DNA of 56,357 bases, filler included, from Sluysia triapertura (taxonomy: Eukaryota): NCBI GenBank assembly GCA_046118255.1. It is 4 parts of 4 records of this genome, joined end to end, with 100 filler letters (N's around TTAATTAATTAA, not from the genome) between each part and the next. Parts side by side here need not be neighbours in the genome. Positions count along the whole stretch, not along the records: positions 22,867 to 44,696 come from JBJNIA010242880.1; 3 more parts are not named here. One strand, given 5' to 3'. The notes below the pieces were generated by a model. That model saw nothing but the letters and a program-made list of their open reading frames with translations. It was not told the DNA's origin and searched no databases. The translations under genes were made by a program, and so were the position numbers. Within the stretch, counting starts at the first letter, position 1. Each line of letters opens with the position of its first letter. Below are positions 22,983-42,282 of the stretch, piece after piece.

Positions 22983-25900
22983 CACTTAAGGGCTGATGCA
23001 TGGATGTCAGCGTTAAGGAAAATGGAGGTCAAAAGATGATACTTTCAATTGTGTATGTTCTCTAATATAAGCGAGGTTACATTTTCAATAATTTGTATAC
23101 GATCTGAAAAGATCTTTTGAATCAGATTTAAATTACTTATGAAATATTATCTTTTATTATACACTTGATTATTTTATTAAAATTATAATTTGGTTGGTTA
23201 CGTGTGTCAAGTAGATATAATTTTTGGATTCCTGAATAGAAATTATTAGAGTCGAATTGATCTCTAATGTATTTTTAATTGTTTGAATGTGATCTGAATA
23301 GATCTGTGGGTAAAATTTATATTTATTACAATAGTACTTTTGATTATAACTGTAGATTTTTGTAACACAATATTATCGTTTATGTATTTAATTCAACAAA
23401 ATTTCTTTGTTTCCTTATTTTGTCTTAAATGAAATAAAACTAAACTTGTCAAATATGTGTATTAAATTTTACAATATAAAGAAAATGGAACAAGAACAAA
23501 TAATTAAAAATTATAAAAAAAATTCAACTTTTTTAATATGCAAATCAATAATGAAATGCTACGATACAAACAGTTTAATGTGTAATAAAACTTGATTTCA
23601 GCTGTGTAATTTTTTATTACCAATCACAAATATAAATAAAAATGAATAATAATTATTATTAGTAAGGATATTATTATATTTAATAATAATAATTTCGTTA
23701 AAATTATTGCGATTTATAAAAGTAATTAAAATTTACTTTGTTTTCAATGTATATTTTGTTATTTGTCTTTAAAAAATCTCTTATTAATTGATACAAATTA
23801 ACGTCATTATTTAAAAATGTTGCAGAAATAAAATTTTCTGTAGTAATTCGACAATAAAATCAAATGAATTACGATTCTCAGTTTAAAAATGTGAATAACT
23901 TGTAACATTAAATAACTTTTGAATGATTTAAGATAAACAATTGAATCAGCGTACAAATTAAATGGTGATTTATTCCTTGAAAATTTAATGAATGATTTAA
24001 AATAACTTGAGTTTAATTACTAAATACCTTCAGCTATATATGTTCTTTCAAAATTTAAGGTTATTTGACCTTTACTAAGTACTACGCCTTAATAATCAAT
24101 TGTTGGACTTTAGCTTTTGTAATTATAATAATAATATTTTGTGCACTAGATAATAATAATAATAATATTAACAATATTTTTAATAATACTTTATAATAAT
24201 AAAATTATTATATTTTTCTTTATAATATAATAATGTTAATTATAATAATAATAATAATAATTACATTTATGACTTGCTAATTTTCTGATCTAAAATTGAT
24301 CTAGTATTTCCAGAAATTGATATGATTATGAAAGCAGAATTAAATTCGAATATTAGGTATCAAGATTAAGTCAAGAAAGTTATTCGAAATTATTAGATTA
24401 TGTATTATTTAGCTTGAATTCCACAAGCATCAATTCATTATTAATGTTTTTCATCAAAACGGACATATATCACTATTGAAACTCATATGTTGACCAAAGT
24501 TTCTTCTTTAAAAGATACTTTTAATCACTTGTTGTTTAAATTAGGAATTATTTAAGGACAATTAATATCTGTATTAATTAAAGAAGTTATTTTCAGTAAA
24601 TGTTTTAATCAAAAATTTTGAAAACATTTAATATTGTTCATTGTGAATAATCTGAAAGATCTTAGCAGTAAATTACCTAAACATGTAAAAATGATTTTTA
24701 GATTTTTGTTCGTAAATTTTATTAGAGAGCTTTTTGAAATAATACTGGAAAACATCCTATAATTGTACTTAAAAGAAATATTAATTATATTATATTATTA
24801 TAATATTTTAATTAAACATGGACCAGATCTAAAAAGCGTTATTGATATAGGTGCGTCTCAGGTCTGTTATATAATAAATTTTTTCTCCAAACTATTTCAA
24901 CGATTCGTTTACTGAAAATAGGCTTTTAGCTAGTACAATATTAATGTATTTCACTAAAACATTTCAATGAAGTTACTGGTTCTAATTATTCAGAAATGTA
25001 TGAGACAGCTTCATCAAATTGTTCAACATCCACTTCAATTTTAGCGATTTTATTAAATATATGACCAAATTTTTTCAAATATTCTACAATTGGACAAACA
25101 ATTTATAATAAATTGTTGATTAAAATTGATGATAATGATAAATCAATTAAATTGACTGCATCTGAACCATTTTATATCAGTTTATATTGTTTACGTGATT
25201 TATTACTATTAAATTATAAATTATAAATAATTAATTAACATTATACGAATATTTGTTTTAACATTACAGAAATTTTATTAATTTTAGAATTAAACTTTAT
25301 GTTTATAATATATCTTCATTGAAGTGATATTTCAATTTAGTACAAGAACGAAATAAAACTGCAGAAAATAACTATAAATAAAAATAAAACAAAGATATAG
25401 TAAATTATTAAGGAAATACTTAATATTTGATTACAATTTTATAAGTAACTTTAAATTAGCTAAATAAATTCTAAATGAATTTGAGTATTTTTTAAACTTG
25501 GCTTAACCTGATAAATAAATTTAATTTATTAAATTACAAATAAAATAATCGTGGAGGATCTGAAATTTAAGAATTCCATTTTCCAATTTGCCTTTCTTTT
25601 CCTGTGTTTGTTTTTAATGAGTATAACTCTTTGGGTTTCTGATCTTGATTTTCTTTACTATTCTTGACTATTGATTTCCAAAAAATCAATCGACATCAAT
25701 AATAAACGAAAGCTTTTATTTAAATATTTTTCAAACAATTTCTAAATTATTCTTATTTATAATCTGGTTTATGTGCTTTGTTTTGTATTATGTTGGCATG
25801 TATCGCGCCATAATGTAGGCTGTAAAATACTACAATTATTGCGCAATGTTCTTATTATAAAATATTATGATTTTCTTTATATTATTAACACAAAAACCTC

Positions 25901-28998: not shown

Positions 28999-29108
28999 AG
29001 AAAATAAAGGAAGAACAATATCATTTGTTATTAACTAAAATGACAAATTAATGAGTTAATTTGTGCAATATTTTCTATTTCAAGAAATAAAACCTGTTTT
29101 ATCTTCAG

Positions 29109-29749
29109 CATCAAACAATGCGGCACTGGCACTGCATATTTGAACAGAAGCCCTGAAATAATGTTGGATGAATACTCTTATTTGGAATCAGCTTCACGAT
29201 ACTCCATGCAACATCAAGAACCTCTTATATTGATGGTGTTTCACAGGCGGCCCCCTTGCGACTACAATCAAGGCATTTTGTGTGTAACACTATTGGACAT
29301 TCCACCTGAAAATGAAGATGACGGTGACGGTGATGATGGAGATGAGGAAGGAGACGATGACGGAGATGAAGATGAGTTGGAGGAGGATTTGGATGAGGAT
29401 ATGGAGTATGATTATGAGGAAGAGGAAGTTGGTGGTGGTGAAGATGAAGGCGATTATGGAGAAGACGAAGACAATGAAGTTGGAGAAGCTGGTGGTGGAG
29501 ATGCTGATGATGAAGATGATGAAAAAGACGTTACTGGAGGAAGATCTGAGGATGAATCTTCTAAGAAAACAAACAAAATCACAACAGCAACAAAACAAAG
29601 GCATCAGTGTTCTGCGATAAATTCATTTTCTGGTACTAGTTCTTATAATGTTTTGAATAAACCAATCAGAAGACGAATTGGGAAACAACTCGTTAAACGT
29701 GAAGCCGGTGAATCATTTACATCTCATTCAAATCGAGAGCAAAGTGAAA
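29109..29749 (+). CDS. Internal exon of an unknown protein with a long D/E/G acidic tract
   Basis: cttcag acceptor (29108), open frame IKQCGTGTAYLNRSPE...EDDGDGDDGDEE..., phase-1 donor (gttggt at 29750, or gtgaaa at 29744) compatible with the next exon. Confidence 0.75.
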
Positions 29750-31144
29750 GTTGGTTTTCGATATTAATGTGCTTAAATTTTGAAATCAAAGTAAAATGAA
29801 TATAAGTTATGCTGAACTATTGAGAATGTGCCTAACAAGAATGTGCCTATTGTCACAATTATCTCTAATGTATGTATATTCTTTATGTATATGTTAAGTT
29901 CAATACCGAATCTGCATTCTCTTTATGATCCTTATTCGGTACAGTGTTACAGTTCCATGTAATTAAAAGTTATATCTTTGGTTTCATTTAAAAGTTTAAG
30001 TACGATGTTTGTTCGGTCAACAACTCGCAGAATGCCTCATTCCATTCGAGGATCATTGATTATTTTTCAGTAATCATTATCATTGTTAAATATTTCTCTC
30101 AAAATACTTATAAAGCTCGAAATTTTTAATAAACTAAGCGTACCAATGAGCCAACAAGGTATCTTAAATTAGAACCAAACTTTATTCATAAATGCTGTTT
30201 TAAATTTGCTAAATAGAATATTTAATATAACTCGAAATGGTTCGGTATTCATTTGATTAATTCTACTCAACAAAATGTTTAATATAAATTTAAATCATTC
30301 ATACTTAAATTCAGAAGCAAAGACATGTGCTTCTAAATTATTTTGGGTGCCTAAACCAAAGTAAAAAACAAAATAACCAACTGTAACTTATTTTTATAAC
30401 ATTTATAACAAAGAAAAAATCTAATAACAATAATGAAGAGATGTGCGATTTTATTTTAATATCATGATTATATCATAAATTTTCTGGATCTCAACATATC
30501 TGCCAATTGATTTTCAACTGTTTATTTTTAATGGTTTTAATGGAGGAGGACTGTCAAAAATGTCTCAAATGTACTACCTAATATCCATCATTTTCTTTAA
30601 CTAAAACTCTTAAATATAAATTTCTATACAACCTGAGAATTGTTCAATTACTATAAAGGGTGTGTTTTGTTGTTTGCTTGAAGTTATCACAGATTAGTAC
30701 AACTCATAATTTGAGTCTCATCAACCTTTCGGTAAAGCTATATCAACTACTTTTTTCCATACTTACTTTATATCCGGAATTTGATATGTACCATGTTTAT
30801 CTTAGATATATCTTACTCTGCGCGAAAATTAATGCTCTTCAGATCAATGGAACTTAAAGTTAAATAGATAAATCCAGTTATTCTCATGGTGACATAAGTA
30901 CCAAACAGTATAACATATTTAGCATTTTTCATTATGCTGAATTGGTGCATTATCTCATTAGTACGTTCTAAGTTGTGCAATTTAACATAACCTACTTCTA
31001 CTCAAATTGAATAAAGAGCTTCTCGAATATTGCTGGACACTGATTGAATTCGTAAACTTGCGACTATCCATTGCATTGTTTTCATCAAATAAATATATCA
31101 AACATTTTATTTGACCCAATAAAATTAATTTGAAGCTATTTTAG

Positions 31145-31473
31145 AAAAAGGCGCAACTGTCGGTAACACTAAAGACAGCTGGAAGCGGTATTTGGAGCGT
31201 TATTTATTAACTTGTCATGACAATAATAACGCCCATTTGGCAACAGTGACATCAGAATCAACACAAGTTATGACCGCTACATCAAAATCACAAGATCAAA
31301 CACGAATGTGTTCCGATGGAAATGGTAGTAAACTAGAAAATCGTATTAGCGTTCCTGTATTTTTGTTGCGAGCATTGCGTCGAAATATCATGCGAATTTC
31401 AGCAAATGATAGTAATGACCGAGATCGAAATAATCAGCAAGCTACCTTGAATTCCAGTTCTGAAAATATTGTG
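31145..31473 (+). CDS. Next exon of the same unknown gene
   Basis: ttttag acceptor, phase 1, open frame KGATVGNTKDSWKRYLERYLLTCH...SSENIV, phase-0 donor gttcgt. Confidence 0.75.
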
Positions 31474-32071
31474 GTTCGTTTTTATCTGTAAAAAATTATT
31501 TTCTGGCATGCTTTAGACGTAAGCAGGAATATCTTAATATTAATAAAATTATTACTCTATTCATTTAATTGTATCTCCATTTTATCATAAACCCAGTAAA
31601 ATATTAAAATTTTAAATCTTATGAATCACAGTCATACAGCCACTAACAAATGCCTATTTAGTATGCTTAATTATATAGTAGTTGATCAAATATTCCTACT
31701 GCTGCAACTAAATGTCTAAAATTTGGCTTACTTTTTTATAATAACACTCTCTAAATATAAAAAATATTTATTTTGATATTCCAGATGATAAATATTGTTA
31801 TTGGTTATTTCAGAGGCATTATACAATTAAGAAAAAAACTAAACTATTTGGTAAAATATGTGGATATACTAGCTTGTGATATGAAAGTTACATGGGCCCA
31901 TAGAGAGTTAAATTGATGGATTGTTTTGCACCTTTAAAGAAATTGATAATGCACAAAGTAAAGAGGATGACGTTGTGGAGGATGTTCGATTGTAGAGCAA
32001 ATCAGCAGCTGTTGAAAAATTGATGAAAGAATTTTAGACAAATACAGTGTTCCTTTTAGTTATTGATATTA

Positions 32072-32896
32072 TCGTAAAATCCCGTGTATAAGCCGTGGGA
32101 TTTTAAACTAAATTTTTTTAAAAGAAAATTTAAATAATGTATTCAAAACCACTAAAATCCTCATCAAAACTCGAGCAATCTGAATGTTTGGGTAACTCTT
32201 CTAAACTTTCTTCAACTTCTTTATGATTTAAGTCTTCTCGACATAAAATACTTGACCTATAAAATCCAGCCCTTGATTCTCCTATCCAATTACAAATTAA
32301 ACCATAAGAGGCTTACTTTAAAATGATCTATTAACTGAGATATGGAATGGTTGTAAAATCTTGGTTGACTCATCATACATCACTACTAATCTGGAAACAG
32401 ATTTAATTTATTTTTGACATCTCCAGTTAAATGGGCCTTTGCTGAATCAACTATTAACATTGATAACGGATCGGTCTTTTTCAAACTTCATGTACCCATT
32501 CCATCGTGATTTTACTATCGATCCAACATTTGGAAATTACTTGAACAACTATTCCTCTCGGAAAACTTCTTTCAAACATTATTAATGGTGGTGATTTATT
32601 GCCATCAGCAGAAACACATAGAACAACAGTAAAGTGAGTTTTTTCATGCCTTGTTGAAATTCTGACTGATTTCACACCTTTTGATTCGACAGGAGGTGAA
32701 AACAACAAAAAATAACTTTAGTTTGTGAAAAATGAAGTCTAACATAGGTTTTAAATAAAGATTTAATAGAGGGTGTGACCTATATAAAGTTAAAAAGAAT
32801 CATTAAACTAACTTATATAAATGTGTGTCTAAATGATGCTAAAAATGAAATATTTGTTTCCATGGATAAGCAGAGGCTTATGCATGGGATTATAGG
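32072..32896 (-). mobile_element. Internally deleted pogo/Tigger-family element in an intron
   Basis: DDE_1-type VESKGVKSVRISTRHEKTHFTVVLCVSADGNKSPPLIMF. TIRs tcgtaaaatcccgtgtataagcc / ggcttatgcatgggattatagg, with TA on both flanks. Confidence 0.9.
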
Positions 32897-35043: not shown

Positions 35044-35086
<43 letters not shown>

Positions 35087-35100
35087 TAATAATAATAATA
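35044..35100. repeat. (AAT)n microsatellite
   Basis: Directly visible; it generates the poly-Ile shadow ORF 34911-35135. Confidence 0.95.
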
Positions 35101-35999: not shown

Positions 36000-38150
36000 A
36001 TTAATATTATTATAATGTCTGTTATTATTATTACAATTTTAATTGAGTACTTGGTAATTGGTGAATTGAGGACATTTTAAATTCGGCGGCTTTGAGGACG
36101 GCTATTTTTCAGGAAATAAAATAGCTTCTCTGTAGACGGTATCTTTTTCTTCGTCCGATGAATCCATATAAATATATGTTTCTGAATCACTTTCTTATTC
36201 GGAATTATCAAAATATTCAATAACTTGATTGCTTGATGGTATTTCTTTTGCCGAAAATTGGCAAAACCTTTTGGAATAATTACCTCTTCGTCTCAGCTCT
36301 AAAGCATCTAAAACATGCAATAGTGACAATTTATAATAAACAAACGTTCAAGTTCTTATCGGTTCTAACAAGATCGATGAGGGTCTTGACCATAATTCGA
36401 AGTAAAATGTTTATCAGACAGTTTAAATTTTTTTGAATCAAATTTTGCAAAATTATGTACTTTCAATATTACCTATTTTTAACACTTAGCTGTTAATCTC
36501 TTACAATATCCCTCAAAACATCTTTGGTAAGACACGTTTCATGAGAGTAATATTTGTGTATTTATTTGCAGTACCTGAAAGAAACTCACATGACTGGCCA
36601 GATGTGTCCCAGTTTCGAAGAAGGTCAGAATCTAATTGCGCAATACGAATCCAATAAAATCAGTTGGTCTGTTGGATCCAATAGTATCTTTTGTCATCAT
36701 CAATCATTAATTAATATGAATAATATAATGGTTAGTTTTGTTTGCATCTTTACTACAAGATATCTTTAGCATTGAACAACTCAATAGAAACTTGAATGAT
36801 AACTGTGTTCCCGACTAAAACGTTGTTATTTAAAAATACTCAGCAGCATAGATAATTAAAATATGAATAAACAATTTTAACGTATTCGCATGGAGTTATT
36901 TCACCATTCGGTTAATAATGCAATTTCTGAGTCAAAAGCCTTTTTCTTTTGATATATACACCCTGTTTTAATTAGGACACCCTCTATTAAACACAAATTA
37001 ACAATACTTTTTAATAAATAAAACACGAATAAAATATTACTTATTTATAGTTCCCAATTTTAGCACACTCTTAATTACTATATTGCATTTAGTTAAATAA
37101 ATTTCATTTCAAAAGTATAATAGGACACATTATACAAACTTTTTAAGAGACTACAACGTATTTTATAAAATTAGTATTTTATTGATCCTGTGTTTTTCAA
37201 TACCTCTACACACCTTATTGTCATCGAATTAATCAATGTATTTACACTTTTTATTTCAATCTTTTTCCAAGCATCCAATATTGCATTTTTTAACTCAAAA
37301 AAGGAGAAAGTAATGCAAGTATAGCCAAAAAGTTAAACAGATCAAGACATGCGATATCCAATTAAATGGGCCGCCTTAAAGAACTTTCCAATCGCAGAAA
37401 AGGAGTTTGAAATACAACATTGTCTACAACTCGCATAATGTCAGATTTAGAGCTAAACTACAGTAAAACAAATGTATGGAGAATATTAAAAAATAGTGAT
37501 GAGGTCGAATTCATTAAAATACTTGCTAAACCCCCACTCTCTGATGCTAATAAAATAACAAGAATTAACTTTGCCGAAAATCATTAATAACCACATTGAC
37601 TGGACCAAGATAATATTCTCAGATTAGAAGACATTTAATTTGGATGATCCTGATGGTTATAAATACTATTAGCATCATCTAAAGGATTTAAAAGAAATAT
37701 TTTCTAATAGAATTTGTGGTGGATGATTAGTTATGGTATGGGGTGCCATAATTTATAATAAAAAGCTAGCTTTACGTGTGGTTCCATCAACTCTTAATGG
37801 TGATAAGTACTATGAATTGATAAAAGAAGTAGTAGATCCAGAAAATATCAATGTCATCTTTCATCAGGATAATGTTCCTTGTCATCGATCAAAAACTACA
37901 CTTAATAAGTTCAGTGAAGATTGATTAAAAGTTTATTTTTCTGATGTTCATTTATAAGTTATCGAAATAATTGGAAACAGCTGAATAACTTATCATTGCT
38001 ATTCAAAAAGCGATATCAAAAATAAAAATAAAATAAACTGCGGTATCATGATTTTCATACCATGTTCGTTGACTTAGTGCTTGCATCTGAATAATTTACT
38101 GCTTCCTCAATTTTCAACGTTCGCCGATTGACTATTTTTACTTAATAAAG
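36000..38150 (-). pseudogene. Decayed intronless ORF of unknown identity, interrupted by the Tc3-like element
   Basis: Coding-like, more GC-rich minus-strand stretches with stops (e.g. RIAQLDSDLLRNWDTSGQSCEFLSG; IVNRRTLKIEEAVNYSDAST) on both sides of the transposon. No family recognised. Confidence 0.3.
36957..37925. mobile_element. Tc3-like (Tc1 family) transposon remnant with internal inversion
   Basis: Plus strand WTKIIFSD*KTFNLDDPDG, MVWGAI, FHQDNVPCH (37300-37924). Minus-strand C-terminus ELKNAILDAWKKIEIKSVNTLINSM (~37220-37296). Probable terminus near 36957. Confidence 0.88.
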
Positions 38151-40802
38151 GACTTCAAAAATTCGTGCTAAAATAATTGACAAAAAAGTATAATTATTTA
38201 GTTTATAATAATTAATAATGATAATATTTAGATACGTAATAAGTTGGTGTCGCAAATTCGGAAGAATCGGTTTAATAATTTCAACGAAAAGTGGTATCAG
38301 AATCAATTGAAACTGGGAAATATCGATCTGAATAATCGCTCTAGTTTATTTTATGGACAGGAAAAATTTTCTACAGATTCTGAAGTGGTCAGAACTGGCC
38401 CGTGCCACAGTGTCGTCTCTGACGTAACTTCCATGTGACAGCACTATTCATATCACAAGTTTTATTTCAAATAATTTGCATTCATACATACACACTCGCT
38501 TTCAATTTTGACAACGTGTTCTTTAATTAGAACTTATCGGTAATCCATTATTTTCGACCTTTACAGACCACATTATTACTTTGCGGAAAATCTACTTGAT
38601 CTCTATTTCATAAATGGTTTCTTATTGTTGTATGAAGTTCTTTATTTTCACAATTATTCAGTTCTAATACTGTCTCTCGTTTTTCCGTTTCCTCTAATCA
38701 TGATGCTGTTTCTGGTTATTCTTCGGAATGTGACTTATTCTGATAATTTATATATAATATTAGTTTGTTTCTTGTGGTTTTATTATTAATATTACTATTA
38801 TCATGACACAATTACGAATATTTGTGCAGCTGTGGCTATTGTGCACTTGTAACTAATTGTAAATTTATATATTATTATTATTATTATCATTATCATTATT
38901 ATTATTATACATTAATAGAGACTTGGAGATATTTTTTGTTTTGAATAATATGTCTTATTTTGAATAATTTCATTCTGGAAATATTTCCTCTTACTATGCT
39001 CTCCAATCAGAATTTATACCATGTTATTAATAATAATAAATAATGCTTTTATGATTAAATCTATAATAATACAAAATAACAAATAATATAATAATAGTAT
39101 TTGTATTCTATTCTGTATAAAGAGTGACAACATTGCAATTACTTTGAATAAAACTTCGAAATAATTTATCAATTAAAAAAGACGCCTAAACATCTTAAAG
39201 AAGTATATTGGCTTCCCAATTATAGTAGTGGTATTCGAAATATTTACGGAAATGGTGCATTTATCTAGTCGAAATAAAAAATGTGATAATAAGATCGACA
39301 ACCAATTATCATAGAATGTTAAGAAAGTTACTTGAAGGTTATGAAATATTCAAGAAAACACTTATAATAATAAATATTAGTGCTACATGAATTAATTTAT
39401 TAATAATTTTAGTGTTGTCATTTAAATTTATCAAAATCTAAAAGGCTAACATAATAATAGGACAATAGTAATAATGATCTATAATAATGCATACAATAAT
39501 AATTAATGATAATGTTAAACAAACAAGAAACATAGTTAAATAATATGAAAATAATTTTATAAAAGGCACCTAGGACTTTATTATACGTGACAGTGAGTAC
39601 ATTTGCAGCAGTATATATTCGGTAAGACCGTGTTAATTCGTTATTAATTAAACAATTATTTTTGAATTATTTCTAAAATGGTTATAATTACGAAAAACTT
39701 GAGTAAAAATTTTGGGTAGACAGAGTTAATTATTCGACGAAAGTTGTTACGCATCCAGATACAATTACCTTTAAAAATTAAGTCACGTTAATCTTTTTGA
39801 TTTGACAATTAAAATCATTTTTAACTAAATTTTTGATTTAAAGTAATTATCTAATTTGAATCTTATTGAATAGTAGTTCTTCACCTTTAAATTGTAATCA
39901 TAAACATCTCTTGAAGGACTTTTAAATAAGTCAATAAAATAATAGATCAATTTATATTGTTACAATTTGTATTATTTGTTTTTCACGTCTTATTTTAAAT
40001 AACGACAAAATACGTTTGTATGTAAAGATTTTAATTTTATATTAAACTAAGTTTAACACAATTTTAGACTCTTGTCTTGACTGTAGAGAGACTTTAATAA
40101 TTAATTTCTTGTTAAGTTATTCACATTAATATTATATTAAATTTGAGTAAGCTTGTAATCTCTGTAAACTTCGATACTACATTATTTAATTTAAAAAACT
40201 TTACCTTTTTTGTGGCGGCCCACATCATTATCAGTTGCTTCAGTGCATAAGATAAACATCAAACTATTAAACAACAAATTTACACCTCCAAAACTTTCCA
40301 CACGTTTTACATCTCATTACTTAAACTCCCAACGTAAAAAATTTATAATTAAACCAATATGCCACCAATCGTCGTATTGTCAAAAGTATTATTATTATTA
40401 ACGAATTTCAGAACTCAATTTTACTTTTGAAGTAAAAATTTGCAAATGTTTTTCTATTCTCTTGAGAAACATTATCTATTTATTATTGAATACAAAATTT
40501 TATAACACATTTTAATTTTTTGTGAATAATTTGGGGATTGATGATTTAGATGTTTCGAGGAGCAATACTCCTGACAACATGTTGTGGTTGTTTTGTATAT
40601 TGTACATGGTATAAAATAATGTTTTACGAAAAATTTTTGAAGTAAATAAATGATTTGAATGTGTGGTTTTGTAACTATGGTTCTCTTTGAGGGTTTATTA
40701 ATATTGTTATAAAATTCCAGAATTAAATTTATTATATGATGTACATATTTAATTGATGAGTTTGTTAAGAAGGTAAATGTTTCAAAGTTCGGTACGTGTT
40801 TA

Positions 40803-42282
40803 TTAAGAACAACTATAGTTATAGGTAGAATTGGATTTGAGATAATATATTCTTACAATTTTCATTGAGTGTGTTAATCTTTTGTTTATTATGATCTTAT
40901 AATTTTTCTTAATTCTTTCTTTGACGTAATATGAATTTAGTGGTACCTTAAAATTTATTTCAAAATTACTTACATCGTTTGGGCATGAATTTAGTATGTT
41001 AATATTAAAGTAATAAGCTATAATTAAACAACAACAATCATAAAGTTTTATTTTACAACTAAAAAGGTTAAATATGATTTTTAATTTAAAAACTGCTTTG
41101 ATAATGAATTTTGATTCCAAATTTCTAGCATCTGTTGTCCATCTTCTTTTTGTTGCATTTTTCGGACCCTACAGAACTGTTTGTTATCTAAATTATGATC
41201 ACATAAAATTAAAAACATAAAACTAACAAAATCGAATATAGTACATATTACTTTAACAAATTGGATCACTATACGTGTAATTTTATTTAACAATCTTACG
41301 TCTACGAAGTCACTTAGCTTAACCAAACCAAACAGAAATGGAACGTGATGTAGTATTGTGAATTGATAAACATAGTTTGTAGATCGTATCATCTTCTTCG
41401 TATATTTTAACCAAATTTTTAGTAGCGAGTATTTGTCTAGTACTAAAAGCATATTTTTGTTAATCAGAAAAGTATCTTCTGTAATTGTTTCAACTAAATT
41501 ATCGTATTCTATTCCGAGAAAGAGATTCATGGATATACTGTCGACAGTAATGTATCTTATTTCACGCCTATTCGTAATCACAGGGTTGATAGCTTCTGCA
41601 ATAACACTAATGTTTGACATCTGTTTGAGAAAATGAAAATTTAGTAGGACTCCTTCATAAATTATAGATAAAGAAAAATTTGTTGCAGTTGTGGTTAGAT
41701 TTATTTCAATAATGTTTAAAGCTGAATCGTTATAGCATCTTAAATCAATTGAAGATTCCAACGATAATCTAAAAACTAAAGAAAACAAAAATTGTTTTAG
41801 ATCTGATTTTATATATTGAATTCTTTTATCTTGAACTACTTTACAAGGATTTTTGGTATGTTTTATCATAAGACTAAATGAGAAATTATCTACTTCTGTA
41901 GTCATTAAATTTACGGCTAGACTAACTTTTCTCCATTCTTTACACTGGGAACATCGACACCAAATAAACAACGATTTATTAGAAATGAAATCATTAACCG
42001 AACTGTTATGATGTGACTTCGCAATCCATTCCTTTTTCGACTTCGTAACTTTCTGACACTGTATGTCAAAAATCAAAGATGGTGTTATTTTTCCGTACAA
42101 TTATTACAAATATGTTTACCATTTAAAAAATGATACCATTTTGGATTAGAATCAGAACATTCTTTGGTAAGATATAACAGACACATTGAATAGTTTGAAG
42201 AACATCTGTTTTCATTACATTGGTTAACTAATTTCTTTTTCATAAATTCTGCACCTTTGAAATTTCGAAGTAAATGATCCAT
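40803..42282 (-). pseudogene. KDM1B: Intronless KDM1B/LSD2-like N-terminal module (C4H2C2 zinc finger + zf-CW + probable degenerate SWIRM), no amine oxidase
   Basis: CNENRCSSNYSMC...EC...KWYHFLNGKHICNNC follows the remembered KDM1B C4H2C2 finger (RWYHLSCGEHFCNEC). KKEW...DFISNKSLFIWCRCSQCKEWRKV...NPCKVVQDKRI follows the CW finger. The two ORFs join if one base is added in the homopolymer run at ~42088-42092. No GxGxxG motif downstream. Confidence 0.75.

What the first reader, a model, noticed from the sequence alone, without database searches (positions are those of the whole stretch)
40803..42282. Reader-only KDM1B/LSD2 derivative lacking the demethylase domain
Seen: C4H2C2 finger, CW finger and a SWIRM-like stretch (LLKIWLKYTKKMI...HVPFLFGLVKL) in KDM1B order and spacing, with no introns and no FAD-binding motif. 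The only break in the first ~400 codons is one missing base in a homopolymer (possible sequencing error), and ~1 kb stays open in very AT-rich DNA. The third CW cysteine reads Phe (TTT, one change from TGT). Established: KDM1B is an H3K4me1/2 demethylase and CW fingers are methyl-H3K4-binding-type domains. Inference: a truncated retrocopy that may act or have acted as a chromatin decoy or targeting factor for a selfish element.
Basis: partly seen in the sequence, partly recalled or inferred. Interest (0 to 1): 0.75.

Follow-up and report, generated by a model that had tools for sequence, protein, structure and literature searches.

The report
Truncated LSD2 zinc-finger-only gene copy
An AT-rich animal-type genome carries an intron-less offshoot of the histone demethylase KDM1B/LSD2 that keeps only its two N-terminal zinc fingers, fused to about 245 codons of unrecognisable sequence, so it cannot demethylate and is either a lineage-specific non-catalytic gene or a very recently disabled copy of one.

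Summary
The core observation holds. On the minus strand, 42282-42085 (65 codons, ATG start) and 42100-41081 (339 open codons) encode the KDM1B/LSD2 C4H2C2 finger and CW finger in the native order and spacing. Exon-level profiles give E 6e-8 and 4e-9, and tblastn with a full-length invertebrate KDM1B gives E about 1e-8. One frameshift, at an A5 run (42092-42088), separates the two pieces.

The "SWIRM-like" stretch is not supported (z = -0.3 against shuffles, no Pfam or PDB hit). No SWIRM, amine-oxidase or GxGxxG sequence occurs anywhere in the 21.8 kb piece.

The copy reads straight through an intron position that holds an intron in almost all of some 38 genomic KDM1B loci recovered from metagenomes. 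I found no poly(A) tract or terminal repeats and made no search for target-site duplications.

All eight ligands of the first finger are kept. The third CW cysteine is Phe, and residues invariant in the 20 KDM1B peptides compared (T-S-R, C-F..Y-R) are lost.

The 339-codon frame cannot be decayed KDM1B. In simulation 7% of point changes create a stop, and only 3.5% of runs stay open after 5% neutral divergence. The sequence therefore evolved under frame-preserving selection.

No relatives were found in 1.8 billion representative proteins. Interest is moderate.

The parts
42085..42282 (-). Piece 1: ATG-initiated 65-codon ORF ending at TAA (42087-42085). It encodes the KDM1B-type C4H2C2 zinc finger. 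An in-frame stop lies 11 codons upstream of the ATG.
42097..42222 (-). C4H2C2 finger proper (residues 21-62 of piece 1). All eight Cys/His ligands and the W-Y-H, G-x-H-x-C-N-x-C core are kept. The T-S-R and C-F..Y-R residues, invariant in the KDM1B exons compared, are replaced, and there is a 2-residue deletion before W-Y-H.
42085..42100 (-). Overlap of the two frames, where the single frameshift must lie. The only homopolymer is A5 (minus strand) at 42092-42088. This is either an assembly error or a real disabling mutation.
41081..42100 (-). Piece 2: 339 open codons plus a stop. It is the longest open frame in the 21.8 kb piece.
41843..42049 (-). KDM1B linker plus CW-type finger (residues 18-86 of piece 2). 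W47, C50, C53, W56 and R57 are conserved. The third Cys column is Phe75 (41878-41876). C86 is a candidate fourth ligand.
41084..41815 (-). Orphan tail (residues 96-339). It is open, with weak first-position G enrichment, and shows no similarity to SWIRM, AOD or anything else searched. AF2 pLDDT is below 50 throughout.

Best explanation
This is a lineage-specific, intron-less offshoot of the KDM1B/LSD2 gene. It retains only the N-terminal double zinc-finger module (C4H2C2 plus CW), followed by about 245 codons of sequence unrelated to SWIRM or the amine oxidase domain. It cannot bind FAD or demethylate histones. Its sequence was shaped under selection that kept the frame open and kept the zinc ligands of the first finger, while the residues that are invariant in the canonical KDM1B genes compared, presumably the interface with the catalytic body, were free to change. 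So it is, or was until very recently, a separate non-catalytic protein-coding gene. The copy in this assembly carries one frame break in an A5 run and lacks one CW zinc ligand, so this copy may have just been disabled or may be mis-assembled. Inferred mechanism, if it is translated: a small zinc-finger scaffold or interaction protein using the intact C4H2C2 finger. A canonical methyl-lysine reader is less likely.
For: Homology to the KDM1B ZF and CW is significant and collinear. SWIRM and AOD are absent from the ORF and from 18 kb downstream on the same strand, and from both strands of the whole piece. The ORF is far longer than chance allows: 339 codons against a simulated maximum of 187. In simulation 7.2% of point substitutions create a stop; only 3.5% of runs stay open after 5% neutral divergence and 0.3% after 10%. 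Yet the ZF exon is only 28-41% identical to KDM1B exons that are at least 59% identical to each other. That divergence therefore accumulated under frame-preserving selection. All 8 of 8 ZF ligands are kept. An ATG lies 20 codons before the first Cys, with a stop upstream. The copy reads through the intron position after F-x-x-[FYM]-Y-R, where nearly every genomic KDM1B locus examined shows AG|GT.
Against: There is a frameshift between the fingers. If it is real, only a 65-residue peptide is made. The third CW Cys is lost. Codon-position composition is barely more gene-like than in random open segments, and GC is at background level. The protein language model 'recognition' score is low, 1402 against 2300 for typical families. 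AF2 gives no confident fold. No homologue, paralogue or identical protein was found in the word search, in the exhaustive phmmer over 1.84e9 representatives, or in the metagenome and viral scans. There are no expression data. The neighbourhood is gene-poor and holds TE remnants.
Confidence: 0.5

Rival explanations
1. It is a plain dead relic: a processed or partial duplicate of KDM1B that was never functional. Its frame is still open only because the copy is very young.
For: Frameshift in the A5 run. Lost CW ligand. Background-level AT content and weak codon periodicity. No relatives found. TE-rich, gene-poor surroundings. Low language-model recognition score.
Against: A young copy must still resemble its parent. 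The parent would then itself lack SWIRM after the CW, lack the T-S-R and C-F..Y-R residues that are invariant in the exons compared, and lack the third CW Cys. It would not be a canonical KDM1B. Neutral decay sufficient to erase SWIRM would have produced about 10-18 stops. No poly(A) remnant was found.
Confidence: 0.3
2. It is a host-gene fragment captured and carried by a mobile element, or an element-encoded accessory protein.
For: Tc1/mariner remnants (37411-37584, 37727-37921, +) and a weak pogo-like remnant (32484-32717, -) lie in the same piece. The orphan tail could be element-derived.
Against: No TIRs, LTRs or other non-microsatellite repeats flank the ORF within the 21.8 kb piece. No transposase, RT or integrase is adjacent. 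There is no second copy in the piece. Nothing similar occurs in viral or metagenome contigs.
Confidence: 0.1
3. It is the first exon of an ordinary KDM1B gene whose SWIRM and amine-oxidase exons lie outside the piece.
For: Only 18 kb downstream could be inspected. Genes in AT-rich genomes can have long introns.
Against: The frame stays open for 245 codons past the CW with no KDM1B similarity, instead of ending at a donor site and closing. No SWIRM or AOD HSP or Pfam hit occurs in 18 kb. Residues invariant in the KDM1B exons compared are lost.
Confidence: 0.04

Closest known systems
KDM1B / LSD2 / AOF1 (FAD-dependent H3K4me1/2 demethylase)
   Same: It has the N-terminal C4H2C2 finger followed by a CW finger, in the same order and spacing, with the same W-Y-H...G-x-H-x-C-N-x-C core and the W-x-x-C-x2-C-x-x-W-R CW core. 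This finger pair is described as unique to LSD2 (PMC11118440).
   Different: It has no SWIRM, no amine oxidase or FAD-binding domain, and none of the introns. The T-S-R and C-F..Y-R residues are lost and the third CW Cys is replaced. It carries a 245-residue orphan tail and a frame break between the fingers.
Stand-alone CW-domain H3K4me readers (ZCWPW1 type and plant CW proteins)
   Same: The three aromatic cage columns are aromatic here (W47, W56, F73). Without SWIRM, the residues that occlude the cage in LSD2 (L340 and I343, PMC5453194) would be absent. The nearest language-model clusters are small CW-domain proteins, at a weak score of 0.80.
   Different: The Pfam zf-CW score is only 14 bits against a cut-off of 27.5, although a genuine KDM1B also scores only 21 bits. 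One of the four Zn cysteines is missing. No binding data exist.
Retrogenes and processed pseudogenes
   Same: The coding sequence is contiguous across a conserved parental intron position. It sits in a new genomic context among TE remnants.
   Different: It has no poly(A) tract. It keeps the 5' end and lacks the 3' two-thirds, whereas LINE-mediated copies are usually truncated at the 5' end (my own knowledge). The parent gene has not been identified.

Membership tests
KDM1B/LSD2 demethylase | N-terminal C4H2C2 zinc finger | tested here: met
   8/8 ligands are present. The ZF-exon profile gives E 6.4e-8. The only PDB hits are KDM1B.
KDM1B/LSD2 demethylase | CW-type zinc finger with four Zn-binding Cys | tested here: inconclusive
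   Homology is clear: profile E 4.3e-9 and BLASTP E 6e-7. However, the third Cys column is Phe75, so the four-Cys site is not intact.
KDM1B/LSD2 demethylase | SWIRM domain | tested here: not met
   z = -0.29 against shuffles. No Pfam or PDB hit. Positive control: the genuine KDM1B L006 scores 34.8 bits for SWIRM.
KDM1B/LSD2 demethylase | FAD-dependent amine oxidase domain with a GxGxxG fold | tested here: not met
   No such motif in six frames. No Pfam Amino_oxidase or NAD_binding hit. No tblastn HSP in 21.8 kb.
Pfam zf-CW (PF07496) | Score at or above the gathering threshold (27.5 bits) | tested here: not met
   14.0 bits, E 0.05. The genuine KDM1B L006 also falls below the threshold at 21.3 bits, so this test is weak for the LSD2 subtype.
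Processed (mRNA-derived) gene copy | Absence of parental introns | tested here: inconclusive
   The copy reads through the residue 98/99 intron, where nearly all of about 38 genomic KDM1B loci show AG|GT, and through the common 69/70 intron. The parent gene of this genome is unavailable, so lineage-wide intron loss is not excluded.
Processed (mRNA-derived) gene copy | 3' poly(A) tract and target-site duplications | tested here: not met
   No A run of 7 or more within 2.6 kb downstream. I made no dedicated search for target-site duplications; the repeat scans only reported repeats of 18 nt or more and found nothing flanking the ORF.
Processed (mRNA-derived) gene copy | Intron-bearing parent elsewhere in the genome | not testable with these tools
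   No eukaryotic genome collection is available, and the source organism is unknown.
Transposable-element cargo gene | Terminal repeats, an adjacent transposition gene, and multiple copies | tested here: not met
   Only microsatellite repeats were found. There is no second copy in the piece. Genome-wide copy number cannot be tested.

The most novel reading that the evidence does not exclude
A domesticated, SWIRM-less LSD2 zinc-finger protein. Freed from the SWIRM residues that plug the CW cage in LSD2, the module could have become a stand-alone chromatin binder, or a dominant-negative or adaptor protein that competes for LSD2 partners, with a novel fast-evolving C-terminal domain. The frame break would then be an assembly error.
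Probability: 0.12. Interest if true: 0.65.

Novelty: new variant of a known kind. Interest (0 to 1): 0.4.

Why it matters
LSD2's double zinc finger is known only as an intramolecular module. It is required for catalysis and, according to a review of earlier work, for demethylase-independent repression (PMC11241480). A naturally occurring gene that keeps only that module would be a natural experiment on what the fingers do on their own. It would also test whether removing SWIRM unmasks the CW cage (PMC5453194). If the locus is instead a freshly dead copy, it is an ordinary case of gene birth and death in a TE-rich, AT-rich genome. The evidence here shows that the sequence was under frame-preserving selection, which is more than a routine pseudogene shows. 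It is still one locus, with no expression or comparative data.

Tried and rejected
1. Word-index protein search of the 339-aa piece, of the 65-aa piece and of the neighbouring 251-aa ORF found nothing.

2. Exhaustive phmmer over 1.84e9 representatives gave one hit, P0001. It is an 81-aa tandem-repeat protein whose score comes from the same 44-aa match repeated, so I judged it spurious.

3. The search for related loci in metagenome and viral contigs found nothing.

4. The single-sequence AF2 model had pLDDT 34, so no fold search was worthwhile.

5. An ESM Atlas search gave weak CW-cluster leads for the whole ORF (0.80) and nothing for the tail.

6. An apparent tail-versus-downstream similarity (z 6.8) was my own artefact, caused by overlapping coordinates. 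Redone without overlap, there is no internal duplication.

7. A possible second ZF-end/linker remnant sits at the ORF's C-terminus (about 41197-41084). It had the best score among roughly 855 null windows (46, against a next best of 41). The exon profiles do not support it, so I treat it as unproven.

8. The Ac102 (baculovirus) PDB hit to tail residues 134-207 has E 0.35-0.5 and I took it as chance.

9. A tiny intron in place of the frameshift is rejected. The only GT in the junction lies inside the last Cys codon, and splicing there does not restore the frame (read).

10. A ciliate-type genetic code is rejected. The ORF contains no TAA or TAG to be read as Gln, and no extra KDM1B HSPs appear between stops.

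12. I could not identify the source organism.

Full report
ANATOMY. The feature lies on the minus strand of a roughly 25% GC eukaryotic piece. It has two parts.
- Piece 1 (42282-42085) starts at an ATG that is preceded by an in-frame stop. It runs 65 codons to a TAA.
- Piece 2 (42100-41081) is open for 339 codons and overlaps piece 1 by 16 nt in another frame.
- The frame switch must lie within 42100-42085, where the only homopolymer is A5 (42092-42088 on the minus strand).

HOMOLOGY TO KDM1B. Searched separately against PDB sequences, both pieces hit KDM1B/LSD2.
- Piece 1 hits KDM1B only (E 0.005-0.17, chain residues about 22-70 in 4fwe numbering).
- The first 100 residues of piece 2 hit KDM1B only (E 0.13, residues 83-136).
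- The two matches are collinear and adjacent.

To get non-human comparators I scanned metagenome contigs with a degenerate DNA pattern for W-Y-H-x3-G-x-H-x-C-N-x-C. It returned 47 loci.
- About 43 are genuine KDM1B finger exons.
- L006 and L007 are transcript-like contigs encoding full-length KDM1B. L006 matches the human LSD2 chains at E 2e-241 and has Pfam SWIRM and Amino_oxidase domains.
- L003 and L041 carry an exon peptide identical to the vertebrate/human one. I took them as possibly human and left them out of every later step.
- L033 and L036 are chance matches.

With these comparators the homology is clear.
- tblastn of L006, L007 and L039 against the piece hits only 42141-42097 (ZF) and 42055-41804 (CW), with summed E of 4e-8 to 6e-9.
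- BLASTP gives E 1e-5 for the ZF and 6e-7 for the CW.
- Smith-Waterman scores against shuffles give z 9.5 and 10.9.
- Exon-level profiles, built from 26 ZF-exon and 25 linker+CW-exon peptides and never joined, hit exactly these two segments among 963 open segments of the piece. E-values are 6.4e-8 and 4.3e-9, and the next best is 0.26 or worse.

All eight C4H2C2 ligands are present. In the CW, W47, C50, C53, W56 and R57 are conserved.

WHAT IS ABSENT. The SWIRM claim fails.
- Residues 96-339 against the KDM1B linker+SWIRM score z = -0.29 (p 0.61).
- Pfam and PDB find nothing at E<=10.
- Pfam does detect SWIRM at 34.8 bits in the genuine KDM1B L006.

No amine-oxidase or FAD-binding sequence exists anywhere in the piece.
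- There is no GxGxx[GA] in six frames except an acidic low-complexity run.
- There are no relevant Pfam hits in 237 open segments on both strands.
- There is no tblastn HSP to SWIRM or AOD.

INTRONS. In almost all of the roughly 38 genomic KDM1B loci examined, the finger exon ends ...Y-R-AG|GT(A/G)A. The linker+CW exon follows after 60-1,800 nt. Most also have an intron just before the C-x-G-x-G...W-Y-H exon. The window reads through both positions. This fits an mRNA-derived copy. Lineage-wide intron loss cannot be excluded, because the parent gene of this genome is unavailable. There is no poly(A) remnant and no flanking repeats other than microsatellites. I made no dedicated search for target-site duplications.

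CODING STATUS. Evidence that the frame is or was under selection:
- The 339-codon frame exceeds every one of 200 Markov simulations of the whole piece (maximum 187).
- In a mutation simulation on the ORF itself, 7.2% of AT-biased point substitutions create a stop. The frame survives 5% divergence in 3.5% of runs and 10% divergence in 0.3%.
- Yet the finger exon is only 28-41% identical to KDM1B exons that share at least 59% identity among themselves. The residues not fixed by my search pattern that are invariant in those 20 distinct peptides (T-S-R before W-Y-H, and F..Y-R after C-N-x-C) are all replaced.

That divergence therefore did not accumulate neutrally. Either this sequence evolved as its own coding gene, or it is a copy less than about 5% diverged from such a gene.

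Evidence against present function:
- There is a frame break between the fingers.
- One CW ligand is lost.
- Codon periodicity is weak and GC is at background level.
- The language-model recognition score is low.
- AF2 gives no confident fold.
- No relative was found in any database searched.

CONTEXT. The surrounding region is gene-poor. It holds a Tc1-like remnant (37411-37584 HTH, 37727-37921 DDE_3, +), a weak pogo-like fragment (32484-32717, -), and microsatellites. It contains no tRNA or Rfam hits.

INTERPRETATION.
- Shown: this is a KDM1B-derived double zinc finger without SWIRM or AOD. It is intron-less and in a long frame maintained by selection until at least very recently.
- Inferred: the product, if made, is non-catalytic.
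The CW cage does not bind H3 because SWIRM residues L340 and I343 occupy it (PMC5453194). A review attributes demethylase-independent repression to the N-terminal finger region (PMC11241480). A SWIRM-less derivative could in principle expose the cage. However, the missing Cys makes a canonical CW fold doubtful, so 'reader' remains speculation.
- Phyletic background: LSD2 is ancestral to animals but absent from several phyla and from some arthropods (PMC10721905). The source organism could not be identified.

METHOD NOTES. The two pieces were always searched apart. In my own scripts, stops were read as X only. That joined step was deliberately left out.

Noticed in passing
window 37411-37584 (+) and 37727-37921 (+): Decayed Tc1/mariner-type transposase. 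HTH_Tnp_Tc3_2 scores E 4.8e-6 and DDE_3 scores E 0.0035, in different frames. It is a dead element about 3.5 kb downstream of the ORF.
   Followed up: partly
window 32484-32717 (-): Weak pogo/DDE_1-like fragment (E 0.1), judged mainly by eye from the peptide.
   Followed up: no
window 29044-29796 (+) and 31129-31488 (+): A 251-codon open frame with strong codon periodicity (GC1/2/3 = 0.51/0.36/0.28, chi-square p 3e-13) and a long acidic D/E/G run. A second 120-codon frame lies 1.3 kb further on. These are probably exons of a real gene, but the word search found no relatives.
   Followed up: partly
window about 41197-41084 (-), C-terminal end of the 339-codon ORF: Weak resemblance to the KDM1B stretch from the second finger His to the pre-CW linker (H..D...FC...KDG.Q..E.W..NS.S.Q). 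It was the best of about 855 null windows (score 46; z 2.9-4.9). The exon profiles do not support it. It might be a second, much more decayed finger remnant.
   Followed up: partly
window 41699-41478 (-), tail residues 134-207: The top PDB hit for the tail is baculovirus protein Ac102 (E 0.35-0.5, 74 residues). I took it as chance.
   Followed up: no
loci L001-L047 (metagenome contigs): The KDM1B finger exon ends at the same position, splitting a Ser codon (AG|GTAAG), in animal DNA from many different metagenomes. L040 has CW-to-SWIRM coding contiguous in one HSP (residues 99-400), so it comes from an intron-poor lineage. L003 and L041 look vertebrate or human and were excluded.
   Followed up: partly
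window 35044-35100, 24150-24261, 38865-38908: (ATA)n/(TTA)n microsatellites account for all the long 'inverted repeat' calls in the piece.
   Followed up: yes
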